From contig LWCA01000250.1 in NCBI GenBank assembly GCA_001642005.1, forward strand, positions 1-36,695: a DNA stretch of 36,695 bases, in the 5' to 3' direction. Position 1 is the first letter of the stretch, and each line of letters opens with the position of its first letter. A program made the translations under genes and the position numbers. The notes under the pieces are model-generated. The model was not told the DNA's origin and did not search any database. It saw nothing but the letters and a program-made list of their open reading frames with translations. The DNA is from Intoshia linei (Eukaryota; Animalia; Orthonectida). Positions 2,264-29,900 of the stretch are shown one piece after another.

Positions 2264-2898
2264 ATGTCGAAATTACTGAAATTCAATCGTATTTTGATAA
2301 ATAACAGTGTGAAGAGATATGCAGGTACCCACGATCCGACAAAATTGAAACAATATGAAAAGTTTTGGACCTTTGTTTGCATTGGAGGTGCACCGGTAGA
2401 TTTTTAATTTTAAAACAAAACATTACTAGGTAAATAAATTATACATTTTAAAGTAGATACTAGTGGGTGCAATGGCTTATGTGGTTATAAATTACAAACA
2501 TCCTAAAAGAATTCCGTACAAACCATACGAGTATATGTATAAAATTCAAAGGGTAATTACATTTAAACTGATATTCTTCATTCTATTTTCTTATTCGATC
2601 AATAATTTTTGAAATTCTGACCCGATATTTTTAATTAACAAAGCTATAAACGTAGATCTAAATAGTAACCTGGACACGGAACTATTTTGTAATGTTATAT
2701 ATTTTAATTTTGAAAAATGTTAAATTTCTTTTACAGTGGGAGGCAGGTAATCCAGGTTGAATAAAATGTTATTTAAATTAATTAACAACTCCATTTTAGC
2801 CTTTTCCATGGGGCGATGGCAATCACTCATTCTTCCATAACCCAAAGTTAAATGCTGTACCCGGAGTCGGATATGAAGAGGAAGAAGAATCACATTAA
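2264..2898 (+). CDS. COX6A: Cytochrome c oxidase subunit 6A (mitochondrial), 3 exons
   Basis: Exons 2264-2395, 2457-2552 and 2800-2898 with GT..AG introns. The protein has a basic presequence, one TM segment and the diagnostic [27 protein letters not shown]. Confidence 0.95.
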
Positions 2899-2925: not shown

Positions 2926-4358
2926 TCAAATTTTTACAAGTTGTTGTAGTACTAGAATAAAAATTAATTAAGTAATGTTAATTTTTTTAACTACCATCAA
3001 AACTCATGTTTTCGCTTTTAGGGTACATGTCGATTACATTTCGACCAGAATAATCAAGTTTATTTAAATAGTCAACTAAAAATTTGAATTGAGTACATTA
3101 GTTACTTTAAATTACGATTAGCATATTGTTCAATAACTTTTACAATAAATTCTGTATGGTTTCCTTGTGCTGCAATGTGTAATGCGCTTAATCCCTAAAT
3201 GTGATGAATAATTAATAAAAAAGTTTTACCTCCTACAATCAAAGTTATATTTATCCATCAAATGTACCTTCTGAAATAAATTTACATAAAAATTTTATCA
3301 TCATTTAGTTACAGTCAAAATATCCAGTGTATTGTCAGTATTGGCACTTAAAATCAAATTTGCCATCTCCACAGATCCGAATCTACCCGCCCAGTGCAGT
3401 GCAGACTAAAATTGTATAAAACGTAAAAAGATTTGTACCATCTAAAAAAATAGAATTAAAATTATTTTTATTGATCCATAGAAACTACATATTACCTGTC
3501 CAAACCGTTTAAATTTGGCGCAAAAATATATGAATAATTAAAAATCAAATTAAAAATTACCGTAAAAATATCCTAAAAATAAATTAACAAACTTGGAAAG
3601 GATATAATCATTACCTGAGTGCATGCCAATTTTCGATTGTTCTTGATGAATCTTTCCATAGAAGCCACATCTTGCTCATGAACAGCGACAAACCAGGCTT
3701 CGTTCTAAATTTTTATTATGATTTGTTAAACAAAACATACCAAATCGTAATTATTTGTTTCAATTACATTACCAATATGCTTGTCAATCTTTGGTGTTTC
3801 GAATAACGCAGTTTTGGTTTTTTCAATTCGATTGATTTCATGATAAACAGAAGGTGTGCATCGGATTATGCCTTCGTCTGATGTGTCATTGTTTTTATTA
3901 TTGTTTTTTATTTTATTTTTTACATCTCCATCCATAAAATCCTCTAGCGCAATGTTTTTGTCGTATGTTAAATCAGATTTATGCACCTGAACTATGTTTT
4001 CTAATAATTTTTTTGTTTGTTTGACGTAATCTCCACCCCATTCACTGTCATTTAAATTAACTGAAGTAATGTAAGTCGTGTCAATAGATTTCTTTCGATG
4101 TTTAATATAATATTCTGGTTTTAATCCTACCAATTTTCCGTTAAAGTTGTTGGTAATTGATACAATGGTAAACTTTTTTAAATATAGTTTCAAGGTTTTT
4201 ATGTTTTCGTCTCTATTAATGTTGTGTTTCTTTATAAATGGGTAAAATCGTCTTTTTATAGCATCTTCACATACCGTCGTTTCTGGTTGAGGTAATGTTT
4301 CACGCAGAAATGCCAATACAGTTTCTCCTGTCAATACCAATTCGTTATTCTTTGCCAT
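2926..4358 (-). CDS. SOWAH: SOWAH (sosondowah)-like ankyrin repeat protein with micro-exons
   Basis: Predicted exons: 4358-3741, 3704-3615, 3572-3561, 3441-3439, 3405-3313, 3270-3268, 3232-3230, 3194-3116, 3075-2995, 2951-2926. N-terminal LTGETVLAFLRE, then EAWF.., SALHWAGRFG, GLSALHIAAQ and DYSGRNVIDM, which matches the SOWAH layout. The last exon is tentative: without it the frame stops about 8 nt into that intron. Confidence 0.8.
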
Positions 4359-7260: not shown

Positions 7261-10200
7261 ATGACAATCAATCGACCATTTAAACTACCGTGGCTAGATT
7301 CTTGCTACGACGAATCAAAACTACCAACTGAAACATTTATCAAAGTAAAACGACTAAATTCCGTCTAAAAAATGTATTAATAATATTTAGTTTTGCGATG
7401 AATTAAAAAAGACATATGTTAAAAATATCAAATCCATGTGTTCTTTAGATGACGATTTATACAAGTATATAATTAAAAAGCACACACCTGAATTTGAGAA
7501 AAATTATTTCGGCGTAGAAGAAGATGCCATTGTTTTATTTTAATTCCAGTATAATAAATATTAATATAGGTTGATGTTACCCTCGAAAATGTTGCAAATT
7601 CGGTGATTTCGAATGCAATATTCAAAACAACATCAGATTTAAAAAGGTTTGTAATATTGCAACGTTAATATACCTCATTAGTTTAAACACTTTGGAAATG
7701 AAAGATTTATTACATGGGATCATAGAAAAGGGTGTAAATCGACATTTAAATCAAATTTCGTATACATTTGAGGTTATTTGAATACTTTGGATGTATTATA
7801 GTATTTATAGTATCAACTTTCCACTACCACTGATTCAATTTCATCCAACAAGTTATTAAATATTTTGAATTTTAAAAATATTGAATCAATAAACGATGCC
7901 GAAAATATCGAAAAAACTCAAAGTAATAATGAAAATTAAAAATTGTAAATTAAATATACATTTGCATTTTAGTTGGAATATTGAGTGACGCATTGGGCAG
8001 ATCAATAGTTGGTTTACTCAAGCAAAATAAGGTGGATATGTACAAAATTTGTTTATTTTTAAAAAATTTACCCTTATCTCCGTCTTTAAGGATGTACCTT
8101 TGGAGTAATGGTATTTTTAATGCAGAAAATTTAATAAAAAGCGATAATTTCAAAAATAAATCTAGGTACCGTAATTTTACAATTCTATTATGTCATTTTA
8201 GTAATTATGACAAGAAACAATATCGAAAAACTTTTCATAATAACATTGAAAGAGGAATACGTCAACTAGATATTGTTAATGCAGTTAAATCACCAATTGA
8301 TTCTCTTATTTCTAAGAATATTAAAAACGTAAATGATAAAATATTTTTATAATTTCTCCGTAACTACAATTATAATTGAAACTTAATATACTATACTATA
8401 ATGTATACTAAAAACATTAATATTAATAGATTTACTTTAATGAAAGATCTACATTATACAATCGATCTACTGATGAGTTTGTCAAGGATTTACTTAGAAT
8501 ATTAAACATAATTTACACTGCGACAAACAAATTTGAAGCAAATTTTATATATGTTTTGTATCCGCTGATATTGGCTTACCAAAACATATCCAAAGAACGT
8601 AATAATAATAATTATTAATTATATAGATTCTTTGTTTTGTACAACGTACAACGTACAAATACATTCTTAGTCCCAATGACATTATTTTACAATTTTTACT
8701 AAGCTAAAATTTAGCTAAAATGCCGAAATTATAATAAAGTTAAGTTCAATTAAATGAAATATTGGTTGATAAAATGTTAAAATACGTTTTTAACAGCGAA
8801 GATGTAAATTGCCCAGATTCAATTTTATGATAAAACAGTGACAGGAAAAAAATATCCTAGAATTTTGTAAAACATAAATTTTAGAACTATGAGTTTATAA
8901 AATAAATCGTTACAAACAGTTAACAAACAAATAACAAATAGACATAAATTGACGTTTATACATATGTATAAGCAAGGATATAATAAAAATGAAAAAAAAT
9001 TAAATTTTAGAAGGATTTTACTACGAAATGGCCATGTTGAGTTCCCTATTTATGAGTTATGTATTCCCTCAAACTGACAATATTTTATCCATTACTGATA
9101 GAACAATGCAACAACTTAATTTGATTGACCAAGAATTGTACAATTACTTATTTGATGGTGAAAAATATGAGGTTAAATGCAAAATATATGAACCTAACTA
9201 TTAAAATTTAGAAACTTAATTTGTCTGACAAAAAAACTACACAACAATTGACGAGTTGTAAGACCATTCAACGAAACGTTGTAAATTGGATAAATAGATT
9301 ATATTGTACAATTTTAACAAATCAACAAGTCTTATTTTGCTGGGATCAACTTTTTCTCAATTTTTGGTCACTCAATTCGTTTGTTAATATCAATTTGACC
9401 ATTTTGCTCATTATTAAAGATATCCTAATTTGTAATACTACAATCGATGAGGTTATTTTTGATCTATTATTGTATAACGTCCTAGGAAACCGCTAATTCA
9501 TATTCAAAGCCGAACCTACCCAGCTCGAGGCCTACCGAAAATGGAAAATGGACCTTAAAAAATTTAAAAAGCTATGTCTAGTGTCATATAGCCCTAGCAA
9601 CCTCTCCAAGGCTCTTGACTTAAAATTTTAAATTTAACACACAAAATATAATGTATAATATACATTGTATATTGTACAATAAAAGTAGTTGATATTCAAA
9701 AATATAATTTGTTAATGCTCAATTTGGAAAAATTACGTTCCATTTTACAAAAATTTCGTCTAAATTCCAAAGTGGTCTCGGCTAAGGTATGTTTGTCCAT
9801 GAAAACGTACAATAAACAATGTCTATATTTATGCAATTTATACAACAATATTTATGAAAAACGGTTTTTTGACATCGTGATTTCTATTCAAAAATACACA
9901 TGGTCTACCTGGTACGTTTTAAAATATTGCAAAATTTCAAATAAATGTGACACCCTAGTAACTAGGGTTTAGTGCACATTTAAGAGCACCCTAAAGCCCC
10001 ATGTGAATTTTTGAAAAAAAATAATAAAACTATTTAAATTATAATTAATTATCTAAAAACATTTTAATTTTCAATTTAGTCAATTATTTTTCAATTGATG
10101 AAGTCTTCAAAATTATCACATTTTATTCAAATGTATAAAAATGTACAAAAAGAAAAATACGCGTAATTTAATGATTAGCAAATTAAAATAAATGAATTAT

Positions 10201-23600: not shown

Positions 23601-26442
23601 ATCAACCAATATTTTTCAAATATTTTGATTAAAATGTAAATATTGATCCTACAATTTCAAAAAAAATGTGCATTGAACGTCTACACATTTCCAATTAAAT
23701 ATAATGAAAATTTATATAATTCATTCCTTCGCAATTTTTCAATCTCAAATTTTCATTTTTAAAACATTTTGTTTAAAATTTAAATTAAAATTACAACAAC
23801 GAATTACTAAAAATAATACTCCTACTTTGTACTACTGTGTTATTATTATTTTTATATATATTACAATCTTTTGCAATATTGGTAAAATTCATCTGGAATA
23901 TGTTTATATGCTATTTATGAAAATTTGTAGGATTGGACTGTTTTTACTTTATTTTTAATATTATACACACATTCTATCTAATAAATTAAAAAAATGGGAC
24001 AATAATTGTTTTTAAAATTCTTTATGCAAATGTTAAAACAAAATTAAGATGGAATAATTCACTTTAAAGTAAAAAGTAATGTGATATGAGGTTTTACCTG
24101 AAACAAGATTGGGAACCACTCTTTTAAAGGATTGTATAATAGTGAATATATATGTAAATACATACATAGATAATAGTGAATACATATGTAAATACTTACA
24201 TAGATAATAGTGTAGTAGGATTTTTAAGTTAGATTTTCAACGTGAATTTTTTTGGTGGAATAAAAATGTGCCCTCGGTAGAACTAGGTATTGTTTGTACG
24301 TAGTACATAACAGTCAACTTAGTTTGGTTTATAAATATGCAATTTTAAAAAAGTTACAATTAAAAAACTATCAAAATAATTAAAAAAAGTTATTATTTTT
24401 GTGTTAATATTTTCATAACATTTTTTTGCTAATATTTAAAACGAAATATTAGATCTACAGCCAAATTATTTGATAAATAAATTAAATCGCACTACCCAAC
24501 ATTGTACAATTTTCTATAATTATGTTATTACAACACCTTTTAAATTTTATCATTGTGCTCACTATTGCATAATATAATATTCAATACTTACTAAGTGAGT
24601 ATAAAGGATAATTATCTTTTACATTAAAATGTAATGTCTGTCTATGTGTTACTGTTTATTTAAAACATTAACAGTCCTAGAATTTAAACAAACAACATTT
24701 CTATTACAGTGTTTCGCGGGGATGTTTATATCTATTTTTCATTTTTCGAATTTGAGCTCTTTAGGGTTAAAACCACAATTTGCCCTTTGTTGTAAAAATT
24801 AAATGAACCGAAAAATTTAAAATAACATAAATTCTGGAACCAATTTTAAAAGCATTAACATTTTCGTAAATCTGAGCCTCAGAAACGCAAACCTTCAAGA
24901 TCAAAACGACACATTACCCTTTAATTTAAAAATGAGAAAAGTCCTATAATTGTACGTGTAATTTTGTTGTAATGAAATGCAATACATTTATTTATTAGTT
25001 TATTTAAATTCATCATTTATAGAGCAAACCCAATGCAGAAACACCAATGGTGGAATATAAGTATTATATAGAATTAGACCTACCTAATAATTACAATGAT
25101 GAAAAACCAATATCAGAGTATTCATTTGCCACGCCATCCACAGATTTAAAACCAGAAAATGAGTCACTAATATCACAACAATCTGCAAAATCAATAAAAT
25201 CTACAAACGCATCGCGTAATCGTTCTCAAGGTCGATCTAAATATAAAACGCCCTCAAAATCTAACGATAAAGCCAATATACCAAAAATAGATTTTTTTAT
25301 TATAGAAAATGATGATGGGTATATTCTTAGAACCAAAATGCTTTCTTTAACGGATTTTAACGAGAAAAAGTTTGTAAATCAAATAAAAACAAACAATATA
25401 TTACCCATCAGAAATTGGTTTAAAAACATAGTAAATGTTAAAATTTGTCGTCAATCGGTAATTTATATGATAAATATCGATTTTTTAAGTAATAGTCTAA
25501 TAAATGTTGATAATAACCTATTTAGATCGTATATACTCAATTACAAAAACGAAATTCTTCTCCAGTAAACGCAAAAAAAGTTGACCCAAAAAATGTTAAT
25601 ATATTTTAAAGTTTACCATGTATTAATTATGTGAAGTCATTTTGTATTTTGTATAATACTTTGTAAAATAATGGGTAATAAAATTGTACTTTACGTTTTT
25701 GACTGAAGTCTTCAGTGAAGATGCAAATTTATGAGGTTAAAATCTTTTACGTATAAAAAATTAACTTTTTTCAAATAATGAGAATGTATACAAATGTTTA
25801 AAAAAAGTACTTTTGGTTTGTCACACTCAAGGACTCAAATTTTGAAAATGAAATGCTCACTAAAACTTTGCTCTCGAAAAACTATTTAATAAATTGGTAT
25901 TTTTAAAACGGCACAATGTGCAGTGCACATTTTACTTTTTTGAATAAATCGTAACAGACAAACAGATAGATTTACACTAAATTACTTCATATAAGTTATG
26001 ATTGATTTATATTCATGTAATTAAAAAGTTTTAGGACTTGACAAAAAAACAAAAAAAAAAAAAAAACGATGATTTTGAAATGCAAATATCAGAACCCATC
26101 TATGAAACCCTTGCCAACTACAAAATAAACCTTTCGTCTTTATTAGATGGAAAAACTAAACATCATGAATCAACTCCATCTCAACAAAATGAAATGGATC
26201 CAAAAACTGCAACATCAAAAGAAGAGCCGAAAGGTTGTCAATATCTTATTAATAATATATTAATATAATTAGATAAAAAGTTGAACATTAAAAAGAAAAA
26301 TAACAAAGCAAACATGACAAGTATGGACGCATCAGTAGAAACAATGACATATGAGACGAATTTTAATCTGAATATAGATTTAATTCTATGGCAAAGTACA
26401 TTGGAGGCACTAAGATATTTAAAATTGGAAAATCAATTGTAA
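20618..26442 (+). CDS. LRRC43: Leucine-rich repeat-containing protein 43-like
   Basis: Spliced LRRs LQTLVLSANYL, LELCANRL, LQYLGLSWNRF, WQHLYFLDLSYNNITDL and LRMLCLMGNPIS, followed by the cap EYRIYIIDYLNKLSYLDE and a Lys-rich C-terminal region. About 9 exons; stop at 26440-26442. Confidence 0.82.
22971..24322 (+). mobile_element. Non-autonomous Helitron, long variant, in an LRRC43 intron
   Basis: A|TCCTTACCTATATAA 5' end. The 3' end gtacataacagtcaacTTAG|T is homologous to that of the 5673 copy. Contains internal repeated units. Confidence 0.72.
24615..24950 (+). mobile_element. Helitron 5' fragment
   Basis: A|TCTTTTACATTAAAATG..GTCTGTCTATGTGTTAC, colinear with 5673-6000. Confidence 0.7.
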
Positions 26443-26512: not shown

Positions 26513-26974
26513 ATGACACAGTCAAAACTATTTGGTATAATAGCAGATGAAGTAAATATACATAATAATTAACCATTTATTAGGATACGTGTACAGGTTT
26601 TTTATTGGGAGGAATCGGGCACATAAATAAAGCGGAATCAAATTTTTTCATAGTTCGAAAAGGTGAATAAATTATGAATGAATGAATGAAGGACATTGTA
26701 GAAACAAATGTAAAAGATATTGAGAAAAAGTTTAATCGACTGACAAACCGATCGGACATTGCCATTTTACTAATAAATCAATACATTGCAGACATGATTA
26801 GACCAACAATTAATAAGTTGGACATTCGTAGCACTATTCCAGTTATTGAAATTCCTAGTAAAGATACAATTTACGACCCCAACACGGACCCTCTTCTCAG
26901 ACAAGCAAAGGTTATTGAAAAAATTAAAAAATTAACAATTAATTTAGAAGTTTTGTGGGGGTGAATACAAATAA
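26513..26974 (+). CDS. ATP6V1F: V-type proton ATPase subunit F, 4 exons
   Basis: Exons 26513-26551, 26584-26662, 26702-26910 and 26948(or 26951)-26974. Motifs: KLFGIIADEDTCTGFLLGGIG, RSDIAILLINQYIADMIR, IEIPSKDTIYDP. Confidence 0.96.
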
Positions 26975-26984
26975 ATTTTAATAT

Positions 26985-29900
26985 TTATTTATCAGCAATT
27001 GTTAGAATCTCTACATTACATAATAATGAGATCAGCAATCGTTACCATTAGTAGCCTTTTCGTTCCATTGTCTCAAAGTTGCTTTTACCTCATCTTCCCG
27101 AGCTGCTTTTTCCTCAATCATCAGTTCCATATAATATGCATCCTCGTCAAAATTATCATTTAACTTTTGATTGGCACTTGATTGGAAGATTCCTTTTTCA
27201 GCGTTTTGTTTTCTTAGAGACAATATTTCCAATTTTAAAATTTTAACCTCGTTAGACTTGTCTGTCATGGCCTAAATTGATACACGTTAATTAGATTGAT
27301 ATTAAAAAAATTACTGATATTTCTGCCTTCAAATTTTTAATCTCGTTAACGCTGGAATCGTACATTTTTTTTAATTCGTTATGTTGAGATTTAAGAGAGG
27401 TGAATACTTTGTTAAGGCCTACCAATCTTGCGTTAGTGTTTTGCATATTCAAAATTCTAGTTCTCGCTTCATTGAGGTCATTCAAGTACTGGGCACTGTT
27501 TATTTTGCTAGATTCAATTTTCTAAAAATTTAAATTGATAATTTAAAAAAATTTAAATGATTACTCCCATCAGACCCTTTCTTTCCTCATTAAATTTTTC
27601 CAAAAGATCAATTTTATTATTTGATATACGGGCCATTTCTGTTTTGGATAAAATTATTTCTTCTTCCATGGCTTTGCTTTCTTTTCTAAGACTTTGATGT
27701 TTTTCAGATAATGTGGTTAAAGCTTTTTCCATTAATTTATTGTTGTATTCTAAAGCGTTCTGCTTGGACTCTGATGAAGCAATTTCGTTTCGTACATTAT
27801 CCAATTGACTCTAAAAAAATATAAATTAATGTGATTTTTTTTATTTATTAATTTAATATTTAAAAATAGATACAAACACGTTTACCTCTAATTTTGCAAT
27901 ACATTCTTTATTTTTAATTTCCTTCTTTTCTAATGCTTCAATAATCGCACTGAAACTTGTTTCCTGTTCTTCCAAATTGAGTGATAAAGTTTTTATTGTT
28001 TCATCCTTGTGTATTACATCTATTTTCAAGTCTAGATGAGCTTTTGCAGTTGCATTTGTCGTTGCCTATGACGTTTTAGACTTGTTTAAAACATTGTTTA
28101 CCTCATATTCCTCCAATTTATCGTTCATAACCATAATTGTCGATTTTAATAACGTTACTTCTTCCTGGAGACCGTGCTGAATGTTTTTAGATTGGTCAAG
28201 TTGTGCGTACACTGTTTTTGATTCGTGGAAGTGCTAAACTGTGTTTATTAAAAATTTTTTAAATTTACCATAGATTGCTTTGCAGACATTTCTTTTTTTA
28301 TTTCAGCTACTCTCCACCTTTCTTCGTCTAATTTACTGATTTTATCTAATAGTTGTAGTTCGCTCTTCTATGTTAATATTTTTTATATAATTTTTAACAT
28401 AAAAAATAATAATTAGTGGACATTTTAATTAATTATTTACTTTTTTTTCATCGCAAACTAACTCATATTTCTTTTTTAAGTCCGAATGTTGAGTTTTTTC
28501 TTCGTCACGTTGTATTTTTGTTTCATTATATAAATCTAACAGTGTAGCTCCTTCAAATTTAAGTGTGGAAATTTCTTCATTAGCGATTTCCATATCATCT
28601 TCTAGTAAATTATATTTGGTTTTGATTATAGTCAAATTATTTTCATCGTCTTCATAAGTGGAGAAGTCACCAATTTGGGTTGTTTCTACTTGTTTATTTT
28701 CATTTTTTTGTAAACTGAATGGATAGCTAATAGAAAAAATTTCTTCTTTTTCTGTATGATATACTACTTGACAAGTATCAGGTATTTTGTCAATAGTAGA
28801 CACTAAATATACATTTTATTAATATTATAAATAAAATATTAAATTAATATACATTTGTATGCATTTATATTTGCATTATAAAATATAAATTTAAAATATA
28901 GAGACTAAAAATGGTAATTTTCAAATTGTCGGGCAGCCAGAAATGCATCTTTCGTAAAAATTTTAGTTAATTTTTCAACACTAAAATCTCCGACACATTT
29001 GGATCCCATAAAGGTGGAAAAAATTTAAATTATTGAAAATAATTCATAGATTTACTTAGAGAGATACCTTTACTTATATAAAATTGAATGTGTATCTGTG
29101 TGTTACCGTTATTTAAAAAATTATTAGTCGTAAAATTTAAAAAACCCATTTTCTAATGAATTTTTTCGTAGGTGATGTTCATATCTATGTTTCAATTTCA
29201 GAAATTCAGTTCTTCAGGATTAAAAACCCAATTTCCCTTTTTTTTTAAAAATAAAATCAACCCTAAAATTTAAAAAAACGTAACATTCTGGGACGCGTTT
29301 TAATATTATAAGCATTATCATAAATAGCAACCAAAGAAAGTGCAGTTTCACTATCAAAACCACAGATTACCCTTTATTAAAAAAATGAAAATAGTCCTAG
29401 AATTTTTAATAAAATTACAGCTGATACAATTAAATCCAGTTAACACACAAAAAAATTTCAATTCTGACAAAATGACGCCTTTACAGTCAAAAAAGACCTT
29501 TTATATTAATTTTTTTATTTGAAAACTATTTTATTAAAACAGGGTAAACAAAACAAAAAATTAATGTTTTTACTTTATTTTTAAACATTTTAAAATGCCT
29601 CCCAAAATGTACGTTTTATTAAATTTTTGGGTTGATTCTATTTTGATTCAAAATGGCAAATTGGGTTTTTCACCCCGAATGACTCAAATTCAGAAACTGA
29701 AAAATAGATATAAACACACCCTAGGAAAAACAGTATTAGAAATTATGTTTTTTTAAATTCTACCACTGTCAATTATTTAAATAAACGGTAACATACAGAC
29801 ATTCAATTTTATGTATATTTGCTTTAATAAATCCATATTATTTATAATCTAGTTCAAGTATGCACAACCTGCGGCCTTACAGCCAGAGCCGTTTTAAGGC

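What the first reader, a model, noticed from the sequence alone, without database searches (positions are those of the whole stretch)
3195..3312. Two consecutive single-codon (3-nt) exons build an ankyrin loop
Seen on the minus strand: TTG ACT | GTAACT..TTTCAG (42 nt) | AAG | GTACAT..TTGTAG (35 nt) | GAG | GTAAAA..ATTTAG (35 nt) | GGA TTA AGC GCA. The 118-nt gap divides exactly into three introns of the size typical for this window. Including both codons gives LDILT-K-E-GLSALH, which restores the ankyrin (D/T)xxGx(T/S)ALH spacing; skipping them deletes the hairpin. Known: 3-nt micro-exons exist, but tandem ones are rare. Both exons are NAG, so each site could also act as a NAGNAG or zero-length recursive site, allowing 0, 1 or 2 residues to be inserted. 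Inference: splicing by intron definition, with codon-level tuning of an ankyrin surface.
Basis: partly seen in the sequence, partly recalled or inferred. Interest (0 to 1): 0.88.

Follow-up and report, generated by a model that had tools for sequence, protein, structure and literature searches.

The report
Two possible one-codon exons, unproven
In an ankyrin-repeat gene of the tiny parasite Intoshia linei, a 118-base gap annotated as one intron is laid out as three mini-introns separated by two single-codon exons; chance explains this layout poorly, but no RNA could be read to show that the two codons reach the mRNA.

Summary
On the minus strand the gap 3195-3312 reads 42 nt | AAG | 35 nt | GAG | 35 nt. 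It lies between two ankyrin-repeat exons of Intoshia linei gene A3Q56_02605.

The GenBank protein skips both codons (DILT|GLSALH).

Without Lys-Glu the repeat has the canonical 33-residue period, and 375 of 431 alignments to other ankyrin arrays cross the junction ungapped. With Lys-Glu the loop is 2 residues longer.

The splice-signal layout is still hard to get by chance, about 4e-5 per 118-nt gap for YAG-NNN-GTA twice and about 2e-8 for YAG-NAG-GTA twice. The next gap upstream has the same design (ATG).

Across the genome, 3-nt spacing between acceptor and donor signals is about 1.5-2x enriched over 2 or 4 nt, singly and in tandem. The scan had already noted 3-nt exon arrays elsewhere in this genome, some reportedly with RNA support.

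Odds:
- about 0.5 that both codons are spliced in;
- about 0.2 that it is one plain intron;
- about 0.2 that removal is stepwise or variable.

The parts
2926..4358 (-). Coding region of Intoshia linei gene A3Q56_02605 (332-aa GenBank model, including the TGA stop): N-terminal SOWAH-like part followed by ankyrin repeats
   Evidence: One search gives a 100% identity hit to the NCBI protein. One search gives its sequence. maps the protein back onto the window: exons 4358-3741, 3704-3615, 3572-3561, 3405-3313, 3194-3116, 3075-2995 and 2951-2929.
3313..3405 (-). Exon encoding ankyrin repeat 1 (SALHWAGRFG...NTLDILT), ending in phase 0
   Evidence: Pfam Ank hit with E 0.004 on this exon alone.
3271..3312 (-). 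Candidate mini-intron 1, 42 nt, GTAACT...TTTATTTCAG; no YTRAY branch-like word 8-30 nt from its 3' end
3268..3270 (-). Candidate one-codon exon AAG (Lys). It lies between the acceptor CAG and the donor GTACAT, and its own AG makes a NAGNAG and an AG|GT join.
3233..3267 (-). Candidate mini-intron 2, 35 nt, GTACAT...TTGATTGTAG; TTGAT words 25 and 6 nt from its 3' end
   Evidence: It is one of 87 genome-wide matches to the tandem mini-intron pattern.
3230..3232 (-). Candidate one-codon exon GAG (Glu), between the acceptor TAG and the donor GTAAAA
3195..3229 (-). Candidate mini-intron 3, 35 nt, GTAAAA...ATTTAG, with a TTAAT branch-like word 17 nt from its 3' end. This 3' end also serves the single-intron reading.
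3116..3194 (-). Exon encoding ankyrin repeat 2 (GLSALHIAAQGNH...), starting in phase 0
   Evidence: Pfam Ank hit with E 0.00076.
3406..3572 (-). Neighbouring gap of the same design. An annotated 12-nt exon (3561-3572, DIFT) is followed by 65 nt, an AG|GT join at 3496/3495, 54 nt, ATG (3439-3441) and 33 nt before the SALH exon.

Best explanation
The 118-nt gap is most likely three mini-introns (42, 35 and 35 nt), each recognised across itself (intron definition). This leaves two one-codon exons, AAG and GAG, in the mRNA. The protein would then read ...DILT-K-E-GLSALH..., with two extra residues at the tip of the loop between ankyrin repeats 1 and 2, and the GenBank model would lack them.

Shown: the signals, their spacing, the frame, and the statistics. 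Inferred: that the internal sites are used, and that the first AG of each NAGNAG (CAG, TAG) is the acceptor. If so, the codons are included rather than skipped. Lys-Glu would be an addition to an otherwise canonical 33-residue repeat, not a repair of it.
For: 1. The layout is as described, and the unit sizes equal the gene's uncontested introns of 36-43 nt.
2. Chance is a poor explanation. P is about 4e-5 (YAG-NNN-GTA twice) to 2e-8 (YAG-NAG-GTA twice) per 118-nt gap. In 302 kb of sampled genome the word YAGNAGGTA occurs only twice, and the finding's own AAG and GAG sites both fit that word.
3. Both internal donors carry AG at -2/-1. About 8 of 21 curated mini-introns show this, against about 5% expected from composition.
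4. The adjacent gap of the same gene has a third in-frame 3-nt candidate (ATG) and an AG|GT join. Two of the 87 genome-wide matches to the tandem mini-intron pattern lie in this one gene, about 200 nt apart.
5. Three-base spacing between splice signals is enriched in this genome. TTTYAG-N(k)-GTAAKT gives 101/155/128 for k = 2/3/4. The tandem pattern TYAG-N(k)-GTA..30-60..TYAG-N(k)-GTA gives 32/59/28. The matches form same-strand clusters.
6. Lead only, not checked by me: earlier follow-ups in this scan report transcript contigs that join strings of 3-nt exons in this species (s1-789309, s1-775761).
7. Annotation pipelines routinely miss exons of 15 nt or less (PMC8831610).
Against: 1. No RNA evidence was available to me.
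2. The GenBank model skips both codons.
3. The skipped form has the canonical 33-residue ankyrin period. 87% of 431 alignments are ungapped at the junction, and only about 3% of natural repeat pairs carry 2 extra residues there.
4. The donors GTACAT and GTACAA are a rare type, 1 of about 33 curated mini-introns.
5. Unit 1 has no YTRAY branch-like word in range, whereas 22 of 33 curated mini-introns do.
6. 3-nt spacers flanked by 32-48-nt units are not enriched over 2 or 4 nt (86/87/87).
7. The YAG-NAG-GTA double is a singleton, not a class.
Confidence: 0.5

Rival explanations
1. The gap is one ordinary 118-nt intron, as annotated. The internal acceptor-like and donor-like words are unused decoys, arising by chance or left over from former sites. 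The protein is DILT|GLSALH.
For: - The GenBank model reads this way.
- The skipped form gives a perfect 33-residue ankyrin period, with 375 of 431 alignments ungapped.
- The 3' end has a good TTAAT word at -17 and no AG after it.
- The median annotated intron in this species is 57 bp, so 118 nt is not extreme (PMC6543705).
- The tandem mini-intron pattern shows no preference for 3 nt.
- The YAGNAGGTA double is as rare genome-wide as composition predicts.
- The internal GTAC donors are unusual.
Against: - The joint chance of the layout in a coding gap is 4e-5 to 2e-8, on top of a similar site in the next gap.
- In a genome whose introns are mostly recognised at 30-60 nt, a complete 35-nt unit with AG|GTAAAA, a TTAAT word and TTTAG would have to be ignored.
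- 3-nt spacing is enriched in the genome.
Confidence: 0.2
2. The internal sites are used, but the product varies or is unchanged. Removal could be stepwise through the second AG of each NAGNAG (AAG|GT, GAG|GT, zero-length exons, units of 45+38+35 nt), which regenerates a donor each time and yields the annotated protein. Alternatively, isoforms with 0, 1 or 2 extra residues could be mixed.
For: - Both sites are YAG-NAG|GT. The annotated protein maps onto the window through a 45+38+35 path with zero-length exons.
- The neighbouring gap has a plain AG|GT join at 3496/3495 that splits 119 nt into 65+54.
- This reading keeps the canonical 33-residue repeat and still explains the non-random signals.
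Against: - From established knowledge of NAGNAG acceptors, the upstream AG with C or T at -3 is normally preferred, and GAG is the poorest acceptor. If the sites are used, inclusion is therefore the expected outcome.
- Known recursive splicing serves introns of many kilobases, not 118 nt.
- No RNA data were available.
Confidence: 0.2

Closest known systems
Single 3-nt micro-exons in animal genes (mouse Ncam; the Drosophila troponin T 3-nt Lys exon), as cited in PMC8042270
   Same: Each is a one-codon, frame-preserving exon between a normal acceptor and donor that adds one residue (Lys in TnT). Such exons are hard to map and are often missed.
   Different: Those exons stand alone between long introns and depend on special exon-definition or enhancer factors. 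Here two would stand in tandem between 35-42-nt introns in a short-intron genome.
Plant micro-exons of 1-15 nt, including 1-nt exons in APC11 and VPS55 and adjacent 5-nt + 12-nt exons in rice (PMC8831610)
   Same: They are constitutive tiny exons inside conserved domains that annotation systematically misses. Adjacent micro-exons occur.
   Different: They belong to a different kingdom and were validated by RNA and by conservation across species. This case has neither.
NAGNAG tandem acceptors
   Same: CAGAAG and TAGGAG are NAGNAG words. Choice between the two AGs would add or drop one codon.
   Different: In a classical NAGNAG the exon continues after the second AG. Here a donor GT follows at once, so the 'exon' is only the 3 nt, or nothing.
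Recursive splice sites (ratchet points) of Drosophila and vertebrate long introns
   Same: An AG|GT juxtaposition could regenerate a 5' splice site after the first step.
   Different: Known cases subdivide introns of tens to hundreds of kilobases. Here the whole gap is 118 nt, and an optimal YAG sits 3 nt upstream of each join.
Micro-exon gene arrays (schistosome MEGs) and the 3-nt exon arrays noted by this scan elsewhere in Intoshia linei
   Same: They show strings of very small symmetric exons, and this genome shows the same enrichment of 3-nt spacing between splice signals.
   Different: This is an ordinary, annotated, domain-bearing gene with only two (perhaps three) such exons. It is not a secreted-protein gene built mostly of micro-exons. 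Its introns are 35-42 nt, against about 38-67 nt in the tandem hits.

Membership tests
Spliced micro-exon (here 3 nt) | An acceptor AG lies immediately upstream and a donor GT immediately downstream of the exon | tested here: met
   TTTCAG|AAG|GTACAT and TTGTAG|GAG|GTAAAA.
Spliced micro-exon (here 3 nt) | The flanking introns are no shorter than introns the species demonstrably uses | tested here: met
   The units are 42, 35 and 35 nt. The annotated introns of the same gene are 36, 42, 40 and 43 nt, and curated mini-introns elsewhere are 29-75 nt.
Spliced micro-exon (here 3 nt) | Inclusion keeps the reading frame and adds no stop | tested here: met
   Both flanking exons are in phase 0. AAG encodes Lys and GAG encodes Glu.
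Spliced micro-exon (here 3 nt) | The exon is present in mature mRNA | not testable with these tools
No transcript-derived protein fragment was found.
Spliced micro-exon (here 3 nt) | The exon or its residues are conserved in orthologues | not testable with these tools
   No orthologue was retrieved. The Intoshia variabili genome is not in the collections.
NAGNAG tandem acceptor | Two AG dinucleotides lie 3 nt apart at a 3' splice site | tested here: met
   CAGAAG at 3273-3268 and TAGGAG at 3235-3230.
NAGNAG tandem acceptor | Both AGs are used, giving isoforms that differ by one codon | not testable with these tools
   No RNA data.
Recursive (zero-length exon) splice site | An AG|GT join regenerates a 5' splice site | tested here: met
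   AAG|GTACAT and GAG|GTAAAA. The annotated protein maps through a 45+38+35 path.
Recursive (zero-length exon) splice site | It serves a very long intron (kilobases or more) | tested here: not met
   The whole gap is 118 nt. The size of known host introns is from general knowledge.
Ankyrin-repeat protein | 33-residue repeats with the TPLH / GH / LL landmarks | tested here: met
   Pfam Ank hits on both exons, 17.9 and 20.1 bits against a cut-off of 21.1 for single exons. PF00023 and PF12796 are precomputed for the whole protein. 431 domain alignments to ankyrin arrays were found.
SOWAH family (WHD_SOWAH plus ankyrin repeats) | An N-terminal SOWAH winged-helix domain (PF25877) | tested here: inconclusive
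   Pfam gave no hit at E up to 1 on exon 1. The ESM Atlas nearest cluster by features is WHD_SOWAH at 0.81 (a lead only), and the nearest by structure is WHD_SOWAH+Ank at TM 0.54.
Schistosome-type micro-exon gene (MEG) | Most of the coding sequence lies in symmetric micro-exons between a signal-peptide exon and a terminal exon | tested here: not met
   The gene has a 618-nt first exon and ordinary 79-93-nt exons. I did not file it under this family.

The most novel reading that the evidence does not exclude
In Intoshia linei the spliceosome works on units of about 30-65 nt, and gaps that annotation calls 'long introns' are often strings of mini-introns joined through 3-nt or zero-length exons. 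This gene would be the first case in an ordinary, domain-bearing gene. It would link normal genes to the codon-by-codon split genes the scan noted elsewhere. It would also show introns being gained at neighbouring codon boundaries (ACT^AAG^GAG^GGA, two of them AG|G proto-splice sites).
Probability: 0.2. Interest if true: 0.85.

Novelty: new variant of a known kind. Interest (0 to 1): 0.58.

Why it matters
If the two codons are spliced in, a 3' and a 5' splice site only three bases apart can be used twice in a row between 35-nt introns. That constrains how U1, U2AF and U2 can sit on a pre-mRNA, and it argues for strictly intron-defined, probably ordered, splicing. It would also mean that the published Intoshia proteome is systematically wrong wherever such gaps occur.

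This case is useful because the protein context, a canonical ankyrin repeat, gives an independent ruler. The two residues would be an insertion into a loop, so the case bears on how tiny exons are born. If RNA instead shows a direct join, the locus becomes a clean example of strong decoy sites being ignored in a short-intron genome, which is also informative.

Tried and rejected
- Transcript-derived protein fragments. I searched exon by exon and by region, and only the GenBank protein came back. A 31-aa exon was too short a query.
- More genome sequence. I therefore could not check the reading-frame context of the genome-wide pattern hits.
- Intron prediction from open-frame pairs was too noisy for long introns. 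Only about 33 hand-picked mini-introns were used.
- Tandem duplication as the origin was not supported. TRF found nothing in the gap. Similarity between the two gaps is at chance level, p about 0.1-0.2.
- Branch-site words do not discriminate. 3 of the 6 candidate units have one in range, against 22 of 33 real mini-introns and about 1 in 3 expected by chance.
- AG depletion in the 3' part of mini-introns is real (5 observed against 17 expected) but says nothing about long introns.
- A sample-wide scan for ORF / mini-intron / k-nt / mini-intron / ORF configurations gave only 1-4 per k, which is uninformative.
- SOWAH orthologues for a loop-length comparison could not be retrieved.
- The Intoshia genome paper itself is not held.

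Full report
**What and where.** The window is a whole contig of the orthonectid Intoshia linei (G000:C950). It has about 25% G+C. On the minus strand, 4358-2926, lies gene A3Q56_02605, a 332-aa 'hypothetical protein' in GenBank.

I mapped that protein back onto the DNA. The exons are 4358-3741, 3704-3615, 3572-3561 (12 nt), 3405-3313, 3194-3116, 3075-2995 and 2951-2929. The uncontested introns are 36, 42, 40 and 43 nt. Two longer gaps remain, of 155 nt (3560-3406) and 118 nt (3312-3195). The 118-nt gap is the finding.

The C-terminal third is made of ankyrin repeats. The N-terminus resembles the SOWAH winged-helix domain only at the level of a lead, and Pfam itself gave no hit.

Both flanking exons are in phase 0, so 0, 1 or 2 codons can be included without breaking the frame. 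Read-through from ACT hits TGA after three codons, so the gap cannot be coding as a whole. GenBank joins DILT directly to GLSALH.

I counted from S of SALH in repeat 1 to S of SALH in repeat 2.
- The annotated protein has a period of 33. The landmarks L3, H4, A6, G10, L17-19, A21, D24 and G32 are all in register with the consensus. With Lys-Glu the period would be 35.
- I aligned the annotated protein locally (phmmer) to the 149 ankyrin proteins returned by the exhaustive search. Of 431 domain alignments that span the junction, 375 (87%) have no gap within residues 259-279. Only 12 place two extra residues in the target.
- So skipping does not delete the hairpin. Inclusion would lengthen a canonical loop. 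This counts against inclusion by a factor of roughly 15-30.
- Loops do vary, however. The next repeat of this very protein has a 36-residue period.
- At the upstream junction (DIFT|SALH), 68% of 119 alignments are ungapped and 18% want one more residue. That is neutral to mildly favourable for the ATG candidate there.

**Is the splice-signal layout chance?** I measured word frequencies in 302 kb of this genome, both strands. The probability that a 118-nt gap holds two YAG-NNN-GTA sites leaving three units of at least 28 nt is about 4e-5. For YAG-NAG-GTA twice it is about 2e-8. A third-order Markov simulation gives about 5e-5 for the first figure.

YAGNAGGTA occurs only twice in those 302 kb, and the AAG and GAG sites of the finding both fit that word. 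Genome-wide, the double with a 22-50-nt spacer occurs twice, once here. That is about what composition predicts for 83 Mb of sequence. It is a singleton and not a class. Its improbability lies in sitting in frame in a coding gap.

The neighbouring 155-nt gap repeats the design: 65 nt, an AG|GT join, 54 nt, ATG, 33 nt. An in-frame site of that kind has about a 3-6% chance. Two of only 87 genome-wide matches to GTA-N24-40-TKYAG-NNN-GTAM-N24-40-TYAG fall in this gene, about 200 nt apart. I found no sign that duplication made the structure.

**Do 3-nt exons exist as a class in this genome?**
- The pattern above, with 2, 3 or 4 spacer bases, gives 86, 87 and 87 matches. That shows no preference.
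- With strong consensus sites the picture changes. TTTYAG-N(k)-GTAAKT gives 101, 155 and 128 for k = 2, 3 and 4. The k = 4 count is inflated by two repeated words.
- The k = 3 hits cluster on one strand of certain contigs (C586, C1017, C1593, C1697).
- In tandem, TYAG-N(k)-GTA..30-60..TYAG-N(k)-GTA gives 32, 59 and 28. That is a two-fold excess for 3+3.
- So consecutive 3-nt spacers between acceptor and donor signals, about 38-67 nt apart, are a statistically real feature of this genome.
- This agrees with earlier notes of this scan on arrays of 3-nt exons in I. linei. Two of those notes report transcript support (s1-789309, s1-775761). I treat them as leads, because I could not check them.

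**Site quality.**
- Curated mini-introns start with GTA or GTT and have AG at -2/-1 in about 8 of 21 cases. They end in YAG, and 22 of 33 carry a YTRAY word 8-30 nt from the 3' end.
- Both internal donors here have AG|GT, which is favourable.
- Two of the three micro-exon donors in the gene are GTAC, which is rare (1 of about 33).
- Unit 1 and the 33-nt unit of the other gap lack a YTRAY word in range. Units 2 and 3 have one.
- This evidence does not decide the matter.
- If the sites are used, general knowledge of NAGNAG acceptors applies: the upstream AG with C or T at -3 wins, and GAG is the poorest acceptor. That predicts inclusion rather than zero-length stepwise removal, although the annotated protein is also reachable by a 45+38+35 path.

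**Weighing.** Pure chance is very unlikely for the layout. The canonical 33-residue spacing argues for the skipped product. The genome-level enrichment shows that this species very probably can and does splice strings of 3-nt exons. My odds are:
- about 0.5 for inclusion of both codons, constitutive or predominant;
- about 0.2 for one unbroken intron whose internal signals are unused;
- about 0.2 for stepwise or variable use giving 0-2 residues;
- about 0.1 for something else.

**What could not be done.**
- No transcript-derived protein for this gene is in the protein collection.
- I did not build, search or fold the joined protein with Lys-Glu.
- No orthologue, SOWAH or Intoshia variabili, could be retrieved for comparison.

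**Known context.**
- Single 3-nt exons are long known, in mouse Ncam and in Drosophila troponin T, where the exon adds a Lys (cited in PMC8042270).
- Plants have validated 1-nt exons and adjacent 5+12-nt exons that annotation misses (PMC8831610).
- The median annotated intron of I. linei is 57 bp (PMC6543705).
- I found no paper that mentions micro-exons in orthonectids.
- Two adjacent one-codon exons between 35-42-nt introns in an ordinary gene would be a new variant of a known kind.

Noticed in passing
window 3406-3572 (minus strand): The preceding gap of the same gene has an annotated 12-nt exon (DIFT). After it come 65 nt, an AG|GT join at 3496/3495, 54 nt, an in-frame ATG (3439-3441) between TTTTTTTAG and GTACAA, and 33 nt. 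GenBank skips the ATG. 18% of ankyrin alignments want one extra residue at this junction.
   Followed up: partly
G000 contigs C586, C1017, C1593, C1697, C970, C2237, C2698 (coordinates): These contigs carry same-strand clusters of strong acceptor + 3 nt + strong donor sites. 3-nt spacing is 1.5-2x enriched genome-wide over 2- or 4-nt spacing, singly and in tandem. This fits the 3-nt exon arrays noted elsewhere by the scan.
   Followed up: partly
loci L016, L018, L019, L021, L023 and window 26233-26272, 26949-26995 (+ strand): Many well-supported mini-introns start with GTT (GTTTTT...), not GTA, usually after an exonic AG or G. The 5' splice-site consensus of this species is very loose beyond GT.
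   Followed up: no
window 2395-2456 (+ strand): A 61-nt candidate intron between two long open frames contains an internal CTAG|GTAAAT join that would split it into 33 + 28 nt. This is another possible zero-length subdivision.
   Followed up: no
window 8328-8429 (+ strand): A 101-nt candidate intron lies between open frames of 125 and 62 codons. It has no AG dinucleotide at all before its terminal TAG, which has about a 2% chance from composition.
   Followed up: no
G000, many contigs: The words TTTCAGTATCGTAATT (at least 12 copies) and TTTTAGCATTGTAATT (at least 10 copies) recur on many contigs. They probably mark dispersed repeat families, and they inflate motif counts.
   Followed up: no
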